From: Macrostomum lignano
Taxonomy: Eukaryota
Reading direction: 5' to 3'
Assembly (NCBI GenBank): GCA_002269645.1
Contig: NIVC01000504.1
Coordinates: forward strand, 62,001 to 126,000
Length of the DNA: 64,000 nt
Position numbers and translations under genes: made by a program. Below, piece by piece: positions 28,411 through 34,661 of this stretch (position 1 is its first letter; every line of letters starts with the position of its first letter). Under the pieces are notes generated by a model, which searched no databases, was not told the origin of the DNA, and saw nothing but the letters and a program-made list of their open reading frames with translations.

Positions 28411-31400
28411 ATGGCACAAAACAATTATAGCAATAGATCAGAAGTGGATAAGTTGATAGCTGACCCAAATAGGTTTATTAAAAGCTTCGTAAGATCTTGA
28501 TTGTTGTTGATTTTAACAACATTTAATTAAATTTATTGTCTTAATTGTTTGACTTGTAAAACTTTTTTAGACTGACCAGGGTGTTAATAGCACTGGAGAT
28601 TTTCTACAAAACCAGCCTGAGCATCTGAGTAGCCTTGATTGCAGTTATGATTGTGCCAATCCTGAGTATGGGGTAATTCTTATTTTAATATATTTTCATT
28701 GTGTATTCTGCTTTACTTGATAATAAATAATGGAGCTAAATGCAACAGTTGCAGATCAATTATAAATTTACATATTGTTTATTTGTATTGCTAATAGTCT
28801 TGAAAGTAAAAAAAATCTCTTTAAAAAATGTACTCATTGTGTACTCATTTTTATTCTAAAACAAGCTGTTGAAACCCGCGGATTTTGAACCCGGGGAATT
28901 CCAATACCCGGAACTACTTTTGCATGTATTCTGAAATCTAAGGCCATACACAAACAAAAACTTGTTAATAGTTAGTAGGATAGAGGTAGACATAAAATGG
29001 AGCACATTCGTGTAAAATTAAGGTTTGAGACATTGTTGGCTGGGGTACTGCGCAGAATGTCAGGCAATGTCTGTCTGACTCTAAAACATATATTGCTAAA
29101 CTCTGGTCTCTCCCTGTCTCTCCCTACTTCCCTTGGATCCTTTAAAATTTCTATCGTCTCTTTGTTTCCTCTCATCTCTCTCGTCCCTCGTCTCTCCTCT
29201 CTCCCCTCTTCTCTCGTATCTTCCCTCATCTCTCTTCTCTTTCATCTCTCTTATCTCATCTCTTGTCTCTTCTTTTCTCTCTCCTCTCCTCTCTCCTCTT
29301 CTCTCTCCTCTCTCCTCTCACCCTGTCTTCTCTCTGATCTTCATTCTCCTTTCTATTCTTTTCTCTCTTCTCTTAACTCTCTCCTCTACTCTCTCATCTC
29401 TCCTCTCTTCTCTCGTCTCTTCCCTCACCTCTTTTCTCTCTCGTTTTTGCTCTCTCATCTTTCCTTTCTCTTCTTTTATCTTTTCTCTCTTATCTCTTCT
29501 CATTTCTCTCTGCTCCCCCTCCCCTCTCTCTCTCTCTCTCTCTGTCTCTCTCTCTCTCTCTCTCTCTCTCTCTCTCTCTCTCTCTCTCTCTCTCTCTCTC
29601 TCTCTCTCTCTCTCTCTCTCTCTCTCTCTCTCTCTCTGTCTTTCTCTCTTATCTCCCCTCCTCTCTCTACTCTCTCCCCTCTCCATTCTCCTCTTTCCTC
29701 TCCTCTCTCCTCACTCACTTCTCTACCTTTGTCTCTCCTCTCTCCTCTCGTCTCTGTAACCTCTCCTCTGTTCTCTCTACTCTCCCATCTTTTATCTGTT
29801 CACTCTCGTCTCTGCTCTCTCATCCCCCTCTTTAATCTGGCATCTCTCACCTCTCTCCTCTGTACTCTTTTCTTTCCCCTCTTTTGACTCCTCACTTTCC
29901 TTTCTCCTTTCTTCTTTTTTCTTCTCTTCCCTTTTCTATACTCTGTCTCCCTCTCTTCTCTCACTCCACTCTCCTCTCTCCGTTATCTCTCATCTCTCAT
30001 TTCTCATCTCTCCTTCCACCTCTCTTATCTCTACAACCTTAGAGATGTAGACATGTATCTTTATCTCTTCTCTCTTCCCTTTACTCTCTCATCTCTTCTT
30101 TCACCTGTTTCCTCTCTGCTGTCTCCTCTCTCCTCTCATCTGCAGCTCTCTGCTCTCTCATCTCTACTCTCTCCTCTCGCTTTTCCTCTCTCCCCTCTTC
30201 TCCCCCTCTCTCTCATCGTCCTCACCCCCTCATCTCTCCTATTATCTTTTATCTTTTCTTTTATCCCCTCTGTCGCCTCTCCTCTCTTCGAATCGTCTAT
30301 TCCTTCTTTCCACTTTCATCTGCCCCTCAGCTATGAGCTGGATTCTTTATCTGGCCTTTGAGATAAAAATCTGCTGATTCCTGCTTGGAAAGCCAGTTTG
30401 TGGGACGTAGTACTATCATGGTTGTTATCATTTCTCACGCTTTAATCACGTCATCTTTCTGGCCAATTAGCAGCCCTGAGAGAAATTTGTATATCTCCAG
30501 GAGCCTCTTCACGAAAATCGGTTCTAGAACCAGAATAAATTCGAGTTCTAGAACCAGAACCAGTGTGAAATGAGGAGCTTCGAACCCATTTTATGTTTGA
30601 CAGTCTTTACAATTTAATTTTGTCGTTCTTTGACTTTGTTTCCTATTGGATATGACAGAAAAGGAATAATTATATAACAATAATAAAAAATTGACGATTT
30701 CAAATATATTTTACTGTTAAAGTGTAAACATGACAACGGTTCGACAAAATTTCTCGAACCATATTCTAGAACCAGAACCATGTTCCGGAACTGATTCTGT
30801 TTTTCGAACCATCAATATGAAGAGCGTCGAACTGGTTCGGAACCGGTTCCGTTTTTCGAATCGGTGATATGAAGAGGCTCCAGCTCCACCACCACAGTCT
30901 GCAGCAGTACCATGGAAATACGCATTTCTTAGGAGGCCATTTAAATTTTAAAGTACCTTATGCGAATCTTAATGTTAAAATTTTCATGGTGTAACCAATT
31001 AAGTAGGATTGCATTGTAATCAGTTATTCATTAATTTTTAGATATTTTTATAAACCATCCCGTATCGCCTTGATTTGCCATCCTTGTTTAACTGCATGCT
31101 GCGACTTGTCTATTCAGAGGGTCGTGGTTTGATGGTTTGAAATTGAATCTCTCGCTAAACTCTCTCCTCTCCACGCCTCTCCACTCGCGGGGGTACAGAG
31201 AAGGCTATTAAAAAGTTATTCCAAAACACTGTAGATTCGCTGTGTACATTGAGCCCTATCGCCTGATCCTTCGTCTGGGGGAATGAGTTGGATGAGCGGC
31301 AAACAACAGAAAAAGCAGACAAACTTCACATTCTTACAGTTTCTTTTTCGGTTGAGTTACAGAGTTGAAACTTTACATTAAGATAGAGAATGGGTCAATG

Positions 31401-34400: not shown

Positions 34401-34661
34401 ATGTAGCCTATTTTGACAGATTTCAGTTTAAACTTCCTCGCATTATTGTAGAATCTTTTGAAGCTGCAACTAACCAAATTGGAAGTCCAAGACACCATAG
34501 CGAATCTCCCCGAGGAGCAGTTCATGGCAAAGCTCTGCTTGACCAAAGAGAGCAATTCTTCTGGAAGATTAACTTCCAGCGTGGATGTACGGTTTATCTA
34601 CCTGAATCAGCTAAAAACACCTTCTTTGCACAATCGAGCGAAAAGGCCTAGACAGGATTAG
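28411..34661 (+). CDS. Divergent Rel-homology (NF-kB/Rel-like RHD + IPT) protein, 9 exons, 438 aa
   Basis: Exons 28411-28488, 28571-28672, 32068-32456, 33172-33311, 33407-33550, 34001-34129, 34215-34321, 34381-34398 and 34452-34661. All are GT-AG, phases are consistent, and the total is 1317 nt with no stops. RHD landmarks appear in order: PKVKITVSNQP, HPWNLKGEHCSTAGV, FNKIGIVKCK, SVRLLF, ISEPI. An IPT-like region ends in RFIYL, followed by an NLS-like RAKRPR. Homology was recognised by eye. Confidence 0.75.
29130..30330. repeat. Polypyrimidine low-complexity tract with a pure (CT)n core at ~29524-29636
   Basis: Directly visible; lies in intron 2 of the Rel-like gene. Its ORFs are artefacts. 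Confidence 0.95.
30501..30880. mobile_element. MITE with 3-bp CAG TSD (PIF/Harbinger-like)
   Basis: TIR GAGCCTCTTCA...TGAAGAGGCTC with CAG on both flanks and internal GAACC/GGTTC repeats. Confidence 0.7.
31150..31940 (+). mobile_element. Helitron/DINE-like non-autonomous element (tentative)
   Basis: The 3' part ..aaagtttggtgtcatttgg..(CA)n..ttttatag..agat resembles DINE/Helitron-associated elements from memory. A partial related segment lies at 28265-28330. Confidence 0.35.
32500..32945. repeat. 30-bp minisatellite in intron 3 of the Rel-like gene
   Basis: ctgtctttgtctgtccgtctgcttgc(c/t)tac, ~13 copies. Confidence 0.95.
33598..33956. repeat. 34/32/34-bp minisatellite with 100-bp higher-order period (intron 5)
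   Basis: ABC blocks start at 33598, 33698 and 33798, followed by an extra C-type unit. Confidence 0.9.

What the first reader, a model, noticed from the sequence alone, without database searches (positions are those of the whole stretch)
28411..34661. Hidden, highly divergent NF-kB/Rel-like gene (RHD + IPT + NLS, with no ankyrin repeats or transactivation tail)
Nine exons join into a 438-aa stop-free ORF showing RHD landmarks in the correct order and ending just after an NLS-like RAKRPR, so it resembles a processed p50-type subunit. It is invisible to single-ORF annotation and far from canonical Rel, NF-kB or NFAT sequences. If the host belongs to a lineage reported to lack NF-kB, this would be a cryptic Rel system. 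I cannot identify the host from this window.
Basis: partly seen in the sequence, partly recalled or inferred. Interest (0 to 1): 0.8.

Follow-up and report, generated by a model that had tools for sequence, protein, structure and literature searches.

The report
Divergent Rel-homology gene in a flatworm
This is a real, transcribed, already annotated gene of the flatworm Macrostomum lignano. Its protein has a very divergent Rel-homology (NF-kB-type) DNA-binding domain, so it is of moderate interest for flatworm immunity but is neither hidden nor shown to be a working NF-kB.

Summary
The gene is real and the coordinates are exact. Eight GT-AG exons (28411-34661, + strand) splice into a 432-aa protein identical to GenBank BOX15_Mlig027372g2 of Macrostomum lignano, which UniRef already names "RHD domain-containing protein".

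The N-terminal Rel-homology DNA-binding domain is supported, but only weakly:
- Pfam PF00554 gives 25.6 bits for the whole protein and 27.8 bits for the isolated domain (cutoff 27).
- A Rel-class HMM gives 19.2 bits, against at most 8.7 in 1000 shuffles.
- hhalign against Rel-class proteins gives E=7.6e-4 over residues 60-314.
- NFAT5-class profiles give no signal.

The RFRYxCEG recognition loop is not conserved. The IPT/dimerisation domain could not be shown, because there was no profile hit and both AlphaFold runs failed. RAKRPR is in frame at the C-terminus, and no ankyrin repeats are present.

A second genomic copy carries a frameshift. The two copies differ by 13 nonsynonymous and 3 synonymous changes, so constraint is not demonstrated. 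Some papers report flatworms as lacking NF-kB, but divergent RHD genes have already been described in planarians.

Verdict: a new, uncharacterised member of a known kind, of modest interest.

The parts
28405..28410 (+). TTTCAG acceptor immediately before the ATG; probable spliced-leader trans-splice site
   Evidence: Read directly from the sequence. It matches the M. lignano SL acceptor motif [T/C]TNCAG (PMC8629364). The gene id suffix 'g2' marks the second gene cut out of a transcriptional unit (PMC5730564). The trans-splicing itself is inferred, not shown.
28411..28488 (+). Coding exon 1 (aa 1-26), ATG at 28411
   Evidence: the spliced translation is identical to P0001
28571..28672 (+). Coding exon 2 (aa 27-60); end of the non-RHD N-terminal extension
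32068..32456 (+). Coding exon 3 (aa 61-190); start of the RHD N-terminal domain
   Evidence: hhalign alignment starts at aa 60
32131..32160 (+). Degenerate recognition-loop region SYRHRSDGEI (aa 82-91), at the position of RFRYxCEG
   Evidence: Alignments place it here but disagree by up to four residues. Tyr and Cys are absent in every version of the alignment.
32344..33289 (+). Core of the RHD match (aa 153-229: PLKVHPWNLKGEHC...FNKIGIVKCKNCDV...), interrupted by intron 3
   Evidence: Pfam PF00554 E=1.4e-5, or 2.9e-6 and 27.8 bits for the isolated domain. Rel-class HMM 19.2 bits against at most 8.7 in 1000 shuffles.
33172..33311 (+). Coding exon 4 (aa 190-237); contains a long helical insert typical of the Rel/NF-kB class
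   Evidence: Spacing read from the sequences aligned: 55 aa between 'CDV' and 'VRLLF', against 31 aa in p65 and 17 aa in NFAT1. Low-confidence helix at 204-220.
33407..33550 (+). Coding exon 5 (aa 237-285); VRLLFAF...SEPILC, the end of the N-terminal domain and the linker
   Evidence: The family HMM alignment extends to aa 286. The hhalign alignment runs to aa 314.
34001..34129 (+). Coding exon 6 (aa 285-328)
34215..34321 (+). Coding exon 7 (aa 328-363)
34452..34661 (+). Coding exon 8 (aa 364-432 plus TAG stop)
   Evidence: Only this acceptor reproduces the deposited protein.
34006..34607 (+). C-terminal beta-rich region (aa 287-415) at the position of the IPT/dimerisation domain; identity unproven
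   Evidence: No RHD_dimer or TIG hit. hhalign E=0.65. In the shuffle test, 143 of 2000 shuffles reached the real score. Only low-confidence strands in AF2.
34635..34652 (+). Basic NLS-like motif RAKRPR (aa 425-430)
   Evidence: Read directly from the sequence. Its position just after the last predicted strand parallels the Rel-family NLS (established knowledge). Function not tested.
34421..34426 (+). Alternative TTTCAG acceptor 25 nt upstream of the used one; it opens a second frame that is stop-free for 74 codons

Best explanation
[quoted passage not shown] It has eight coding exons and is transcribed; its mRNA probably starts at a spliced-leader trans-splice site directly before the ATG. It encodes a 432-aa protein with four parts:
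- a 60-67-aa N-terminal extension with no recognisable domain;
- a highly divergent Rel-homology N-terminal (DNA-binding type) domain, about aa 68-286, closer to the Rel/NF-kB class than to NFAT/NFAT5 and carrying a long helical insert;
- a roughly 130-aa beta-rich C-terminal region where the dimerisation (IPT) domain would lie;
- a terminal basic motif, RAKRPR.

Shown: the gene structure, its identity with a transcript-derived database protein, the host, and the RHD N-domain homology at profile level.

Inferred: it folds like an RHD, enters the nucleus through the basic motif, and acts as a dimeric transcription regulator. The canonical RxxRxRxxC recognition loop is remodelled, so if the protein binds DNA it probably does not read classical kappaB sites in the classical way. 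Alternatively it may act as a partner or modulator of other RHD proteins. It has no ankyrin or IkB-like part, so any regulation would have to come from a separate protein.
For: - The spliced translation is 100% identical, over its full length, to NCBI BOX15_Mlig027372g2, which UniRef names 'RHD domain-containing protein'. The locus is NIVC01000504.1:90411-96661.
- GenBank models of this assembly derive only from RNA-seq and transcriptome data (PMC5730564).
- PF00554 RHD_DNA_bind: E=1.4e-5 and 25.6 bits for the whole protein; 27.8 bits, above the 27-bit cutoff, for the isolated domain.
- A Rel-class HMM scores 19.2 bits, against at most 8.7 in 1000 shuffles. An NFAT5-class HMM scores -0.2 bits.
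- A family HMM alignment spans aa 155-286 at 17.9 bits, reached by 0 of 2000 shuffles. The flanking N-terminal and linker pieces hit the colinear positions with p of about 0.014 and 0.02.
- hhalign against the Rel-class alignment: E=7.6e-4, 199 columns, aa 60-314 aligned to p65 10-227. Against the NFAT5 class: E=0.16 over 20 columns.
- No ankyrin motif occurs in the window.
Against: - The homology signal is weak. The full-length Pfam score is below the gathering threshold. phmmer finds no RHD protein in PDB, and in 1.8 billion representative proteins it finds only other M. lignano copies or gene models of this same gene.
- The C-terminal domain has no detectable similarity to RHD_dimer or IPT.
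- Both AlphaFold2 runs failed, with pLDDT 30 and 38. Foldseek on the second model gave only meaningless matches.
- The recognition loop lacks Tyr and Cys, and depending on the alignment also Glu.
- The homeologous copy differs by 13 nonsynonymous and 3 synonymous changes (pN/pS 1.24). That matches intron divergence, so at least one copy is evolving neutrally.
Confidence: 0.7

Rival explanations
1. The gene is a decaying or function-free lineage-specific relic of an RHD gene. It is still transcribed and still has an open frame, but it is no longer under selection as a transcription factor.
For: - Between the two genomic copies, exons 3-8 differ at 13 nonsynonymous and 3 synonymous sites (pN/pS 1.24). 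Exon divergence (1.2-1.5%) equals intron divergence (1.1-2.4%).
- The other copy has a +1 frameshift in exon 1 and a 45-nt deletion in exon 2.
- The recognition loop is degenerate.
- There is no detectable dimerisation domain.
- No relatives outside M. lignano were found.
Against: - The window copy keeps a 432-codon frame across 8 exons with all splice sites intact.
- It scores 3.3-4 bits higher on the local RHD HMMs and 5.6 bits higher on Pfam PF00554 than the other copy. This suggests that the other copy is the one drifting.
- Divergence between the copies is only about 1.3%, so the test has little power for the window copy alone.
Confidence: 0.22
2. The RHD resemblance is a chance similarity, and the protein belongs to some other, unrecognised beta-rich family.
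For: The full-length Pfam score of 25.6 bits is below the 27-bit cutoff. Pairwise searches find nothing. The structure tests were inconclusive.
Against: - The Pfam E-value of 1.4e-5 already accounts for 24,736 models.
- The isolated domain passes the cutoff.
- Two independent profile tools agree on the same colinear alignment.
- No shuffle out of 1000-2000 reaches the real score.
- The flanking motifs fall in the right order.
- UniRef independently names the protein RHD domain-containing.
Confidence: 0.05
3. It is an NFAT/NFAT5-type RHD protein rather than a Rel/NF-kB-type one.
For: The linker motif SEPILC resembles NFAT5 SSPILC. The best pairwise BLASTP alignment is to a Ptychodera NFAT5-like protein, but only at E=0.18.
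Against: - The NFAT5-class HMM scores -0.2 bits and hhalign gives E=0.16.
- M. lignano has a separate, well-conserved NFAT5-like protein, P0029, with both RHD domains at 65 and 74 bits.
- The long helical insert is a Rel/NF-kB-class feature (established knowledge of RHD structures).
Confidence: 0.03

Closest known systems
Rel/NF-kB class Rel-homology proteins (p65/RelA, c-Rel, p50, Dorsal)
   Same: - Colinear profile-level similarity over the whole N-terminal domain and into the first strands of the second domain (aa 60-314 aligned to p65 10-227).
- Shared motifs PxxxHPxxLxGxxC, FxxxGIxxxKxxD, NPx...VRLxF and SxPIx.
- A long insert after the GI...K...D motif.
- A basic motif directly after the end of the domain, where the Rel NLS lies.
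   Different: - About 20% identity or less, and the full-length Pfam score is below threshold.
- The recognition loop RFRYxCEG is replaced by SYRHRSDGE plus a roughly 13-aa insertion.
- The linker Arg (p65 R187) is absent.
- The dimerisation domain is not recognisable by sequence.
- There is no transactivation tail and no ankyrin repeats, and there is a 60-aa N-terminal extension.
RHD-only NF-kB proteins of early-branching lineages (Nematostella Nv-NF-kB; choanoflagellate NF-kB-like proteins, PMC8677719)
   Same: The same architecture: an RHD followed by a short C-terminus, with no ankyrin-repeat inhibitory domain.
   Different: Those proteins have clearly recognisable RHD DNA-binding and dimerisation domains, and their kappaB-site binding has been demonstrated (literature, my own knowledge). 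Here neither the dimerisation domain nor the recognition loop is conserved. I made no sequence comparison with them.
Divergent RHD genes of planarians (seven in Schmidtea mediterranea, e.g. SMEST009320002.1; RHD-ANK proteins SMU15016868 and SMU15005918)
   Same: [quoted passage not shown]
   Different: Orthology was not tested, because I could not obtain those sequences. phmmer over 1.8 billion representative proteins found no non-Macrostomum relative at E<=0.001. Some of the planarian genes carry ankyrin repeats; this one does not.
NFAT5/TonEBP (including M. lignano BOX15_Mlig013822g1, P0029)
   Same: Member of the RHD superfamily, with a similar PILC linker motif.
   Different: No NFAT-class profile signal. 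NFAT5 is well conserved in M. lignano as a separate gene.

Membership tests
Rel-homology domain superfamily (Pfam PF00554 RHD_DNA_bind) | Significant match to the RHD N-terminal DNA-binding domain profile | tested here: met
   Marginal. The whole protein gives E=1.4e-5 and 25.6 bits, below the 27-bit cutoff. The isolated domain, aa 61-286, gives E=2.9e-6 and 27.8 bits, at or above the cutoff. Rel-class HMM 19.2 bits against at most 8.7 in shuffles. hhalign E=7.6e-4 over 199 columns.
Rel/NF-kB family | Recognition loop R-x-x-R-x-R-Y-x-C-E-G that makes the base contacts | tested here: not met
   The corresponding stretch is SYRHRSDGEI (aa 82-91), followed by a roughly 13-aa insertion. Tyr and Cys are absent in every alignment, and the Arg/Glu equivalences depend on the alignment.
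Rel/NF-kB family | RHD dimerisation (IPT/TIG) domain, Pfam PF16179 | tested here: inconclusive
   No PF16179 or PF01833 hit even at E<=10. hhalign of aa 287-432 gives E=0.65 against both classes. In the sub-HMM test, 143 of 2000 shuffles reach the real score. Only the position, the length (about 130 aa), low-confidence beta strands and a terminal F-x-Y strand motif fit.
Rel/NF-kB family | RHD fold confirmed by structure comparison | tested here: inconclusive
   AF2 on the single sequence gave pLDDT 30. AF2 with an 18-row alignment gave pLDDT 37.8 and pTM 0.28. Foldseek against PDB on the second model gave no hit at E<=0.001.
Rel/NF-kB family | Nuclear localisation signal at the C-terminal end of the RHD | not testable with these tools
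   A basic motif, RAKRPR (aa 425-430), is present at the expected position. Nuclear import was not tested.
NF-kB subfamily (p105/p100/Relish type) | C-terminal glycine-rich region and ankyrin repeats | tested here: not met
   The protein ends at aa 432, two residues after RAKRPR. No ankyrin-core motif occurs in any of the six frames of the 64-kb window, and Pfam finds no Ank domain.
Rel subfamily (RelA/c-Rel/Dorsal type) | C-terminal transactivation domain | tested here: not met
   There is no sequence beyond the RHD region. Transactivation domains have no sequence signature, so the 60-aa N-terminal extension cannot be assessed.
NFAT/NFAT5 family | NFAT-class RHD profile (RAHYxTEG loop, short E'F region) | tested here: not met
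   NFAT5-class HMM -0.2 bits. hhalign E=0.16 over 20 columns. phmmer found none of the 85 NFAT5-class proteins, even in that small database.
Rel/NF-kB family | Dimerisation and sequence-specific binding to kappaB DNA | not testable with these tools
   This needs EMSA or a protein-binding microarray, and size-exclusion or cross-linking, with recombinant protein.

The most novel reading that the evidence does not exclude
The window copy is a functional, fast-evolving NF-kB-like transcription factor with a remodelled DNA-recognition loop. It would be one of a flatworm-specific set of RHD genes that take the place of canonical NF-kB in a phylum often described as having lost the Toll/NF-kB axis. 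It could be tested directly in M. lignano, the one flatworm model with established transgenesis.
Probability: 0.2. Interest if true: 0.6.

Novelty: new member of a known kind. Interest (0 to 1): 0.3.

Why it matters
Several papers state that flatworms lack NF-kB and most of the Toll pathway. More recent planarian work reports only long-branch, hard-to-classify RHD genes. A transcribed RHD-only gene in M. lignano, which can be made transgenic, gives a concrete handle for asking whether these divergent RHD proteins still act as stress or immune transcription factors. The gene is not a discovery in the sense of being unannotated, and the present evidence does not show that it is functional. Its value is as a candidate, not as a finding.

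Tried and rejected
- **Eight-exon enumeration around my first nominal boundaries:** it gave no solution, because I had not listed the true acceptor 34452. Frame-by-frame translation resolved it.
- **Model A:** acceptor 34427, 437 aa, ending in SSEKA. Rejected because only acceptor 34452 reproduces the deposited protein.
- **phmmer against PDB:** no RHD hit with either the whole protein or the N-terminal domain.
- **Homologue searches:** the word-indexed search, repeated at E<=10, gave nothing new and wasted one search. The exhaustive phmmer search found only other M. lignano copies or gene models of this gene.
- **Profile search seeded with Rel, NFAT and this protein:** it returned only NFAT5-class proteins, so I obtained no Rel-class or flatworm bridging sequences.
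- **BLASTP against the best candidates:** not significant.
- **AlphaFold2:** both the single-sequence run and the run with an NFAT5-dominated alignment gave low confidence. Foldseek on the second model was uninformative.
- **Literature and supplement searches for the gene id:** nothing found. The planarian paper's supplements are not held.
- **NFAT5-type assignment:** considered and rejected.
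Full report
**The observation.**
The region has AT-rich introns with GT-AG boundaries, so it is a eukaryotic gene. Translating each candidate exon frame by frame gives eight coding exons: 28411-28488, 28571-28672, 32068-32456, 33172-33311, 33407-33550, 34001-34129, 34215-34321 and 34452-34661. Every exon is preceded by AG and, apart from the last, followed by GT. Introns measure 82, 3395, 715, 95, 450, 85 and 130 nt.

The spliced product is 432 aa. It is identical, residue for residue, to NCBI 'hypothetical protein BOX15_Mlig027372g2 [Macrostomum lignano]', which UniRef names 'RHD domain-containing protein'. 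The gene lies at NIVC01000504.1:90411-96661 of assembly GCA_002269645.1.

That gap cannot be an intron.

**Host and transcript support.**
[quoted passage not shown] GenBank gene models of this assembly were built only from RNA-seq and de novo transcripts (StringTie/TACO, TBONE, TransDecoder; PMC5730564). The junctions therefore come from transcripts. I did not see the reads myself.

The ATG directly follows TTTCAG. This fits the M. lignano spliced-leader acceptor motif [T/C]TNCAG, and the 35-nt leader ends in ATG, in frame with the gene's own ATG (PMC8629364). The suffix 'g2' marks a second gene cut out of a transcriptional unit. SL trans-splicing at 28411 is therefore likely, but it is an inference.

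**Is it a Rel-homology protein?**
Pairwise methods see nothing. phmmer against PDB finds no RHD chain. phmmer against 1.8 billion representative proteins finds only other M. lignano copies or gene models of this gene. BLASTP to NFAT5-like proteins is not significant.

Profile methods do see a signal:
- Pfam RHD_DNA_bind matches aa 153-229 with E=1.4e-5 and 25.6 bits, against a cutoff of 27. The isolated domain, aa 61-286, scores 27.8 bits with E=2.9e-6.
- An HMM built from p65, c-Rel, p50 and Dorsal scores 19.2 bits, while 1000 shuffles reach at most 8.7. I checked p65, p50 and c-Rel against PDB; Dorsal was not checked.
- A family HMM gives one alignment over aa 155-286 at 17.9 bits, reached by 0 of 2000 shuffles.
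- The N-terminal strand piece and the linker piece each land at the colinear position, with p of about 0.014 and 0.02.
- hhalign against the Rel-class alignment gives E=7.6e-4 over 199 columns, aligning aa 60-314 to p65 10-227.

NFAT5-class profiles give no signal: -0.2 bits with the HMM, and E=0.16 over 20 columns with hhalign. M. lignano also has a separate, well-conserved NFAT5-like protein (P0029) with both RHD domains.

The 55-aa spacing between the GI..K..CDV motif and VRLLF compares with 31 aa in p65 and 17 aa in NFAT1 (sequences aligned). This also points to the Rel/NF-kB class. I conclude that the N-terminal RHD domain is real but extremely divergent.

**What is not supported.**
- The DNA-recognition loop RFRYxCEG corresponds to SYRHRSDGEI followed by a roughly 13-residue insertion. 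The alignments disagree on the register, but Tyr and Cys are missing in all of them. The linker Arg (p65 R187) is also absent.
- The C-terminal 146 residues have no detectable similarity to the RHD dimerisation/IPT domain. There is no Pfam hit. hhalign gives E=0.65 against both classes. In the shuffle test, 143 of 2000 shuffles reach the real score.
- AlphaFold2 failed twice, with pLDDT 30 and 37.8. Foldseek on the second model returned only weak, generic matches.

The IPT assignment therefore rests only on position, length and low-confidence strands. RAKRPR (34635-34652) is in frame at the place where Rel proteins carry their NLS, but this is a motif, not a demonstrated function. There are no ankyrin repeats in the protein or anywhere in the window.

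**Is it under selection?**
A syntenic second copy lies on NIVC01002012.1 (L003). It has all eight exons and intact splice sites. It also carries an extra T in exon 1 (a frameshift), a 45-nt deletion in exon 2 and a 3-nt insertion in exon 3.

Over exons 3-8 the two copies differ at 13 nonsynonymous and 3 synonymous sites. That gives pN 0.015 and pS 0.012, a ratio of 1.24. Introns differ by 1.1-2.4%. This is the neutral expectation, so at least one copy is unconstrained.

The window copy scores 3.3-4 bits higher than the other copy on the local RHD HMMs and 5.6 bits higher on Pfam PF00554. This hints that the other copy is the one decaying, but without an outgroup it is weak evidence.

**Comparison with what is known.**
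Some papers state that platyhelminths lack NF-kB (PMC4484250) or lack p50/p105 (PMC11432056).

However, planarian RHD-ANK proteins were noted in 2018 (PMC6211748). A 2026 study reports seven highly divergent RHD genes in Schmidtea, alongside a conserved NFAT5. RNAi of the most Relish-like one was lethal but did not change transgene expression, so that paper judged it not involved in transgene suppression (PMC13563047).

The Macrostomum gene is thus a new, uncharacterised member of an already noticed kind. I could not test whether it is orthologous to the planarian genes. It is not hidden from annotation.

**Verdict.**
This is a real, transcribed, annotated gene for a very divergent, short, RHD-only protein of the Rel/NF-kB class. 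Its recognition loop is remodelled, its dimerisation domain is unproven, and selective constraint has not been demonstrated. Interest is modest, at 0.3. It would rise if orthologues show purifying selection or if the protein proves to bind DNA.

Noticed in passing
window 34421-34650: A second, consensus-like acceptor (TTTCAG|TTT at 34427) lies 25 nt upstream of the acceptor actually used. It opens the other reading frame of exon 8, which stays stop-free for 74 codons. The result would be a 437-aa product ending in SSEKA, without RAKRPR. Only about 1% of mononucleotide shuffles of the exon give such an open frame, and the frame is also open in the second genomic copy. This may be an alternative C-terminus, or it may be chance.
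   Followed up: partly
L003 (NIVC01002012.1:81747-99821) 6258-10075, versus window 28411-34661: A syntenic homeologous copy of the gene with the same downstream neighbours. It has a +1 frameshift in exon 1, a 45-nt deletion in exon 2 and a 3-nt insertion in exon 3. Its GenBank model is therefore truncated to 219 aa (BOX15_Mlig017427g1). The two copies differ by 13 nonsynonymous and 3 synonymous changes.
   Followed up: yes
window 28861-31937 (intron 2): About 3.1 kb of intron 2 is absent from the homeologous copy. It contains a long degenerate CT/TCCTCTC microsatellite (29167-29839, 30064-30212) and other repeat-like sequence. This is probably an insertion or expansion specific to this copy.
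   Followed up: partly
window 32500-32974 and 33598-33954: There are minisatellites inside introns 3 and 5: 30 nt x 15.6 copies at 93% match, and 34/100 nt x 10.7/3.6 copies. Copy numbers differ between the two genomic copies.
   Followed up: partly
window 14400-22100: A GC-rich block (51-56% GC, against 30-40% elsewhere) holds LTR-retrotransposon pieces in opposite orientations: integrase on + (16789-18402), RT RNase H on - (18156-19118) and gag on - (21480-22073). The elements are nested or rearranged.
   Followed up: partly
window 5625-7538 (+): A 637-aa uninterrupted ORF with no Pfam match at E<=0.001. It may be a transposon protein. Not identified.
   Followed up: partly
window 8519-9583: A tandem repeat encoding about ten copies of ASPMGHGIQHHPASAASAA. 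Several of the six reading frames across it are open, on both strands.
   Followed up: no
window 48561-49238 (-) and 56157-56843 (-): Neighbouring host genes: a single-exon ATG101 (autophagy-related protein 101, E=2.4e-31) and an exon of NAT10 (the helicase domain of RNA cytidine acetyltransferase, E=7e-44).
   Followed up: yes
window 37896-37970 (-) and 39640-39713 (+): tRNA-Val(CAC) and tRNA-Thr(CGT) genes lie inside the span of the annotated minus-strand gene at window 35109-41231 (320-aa product, no Pfam hit).
   Followed up: partly
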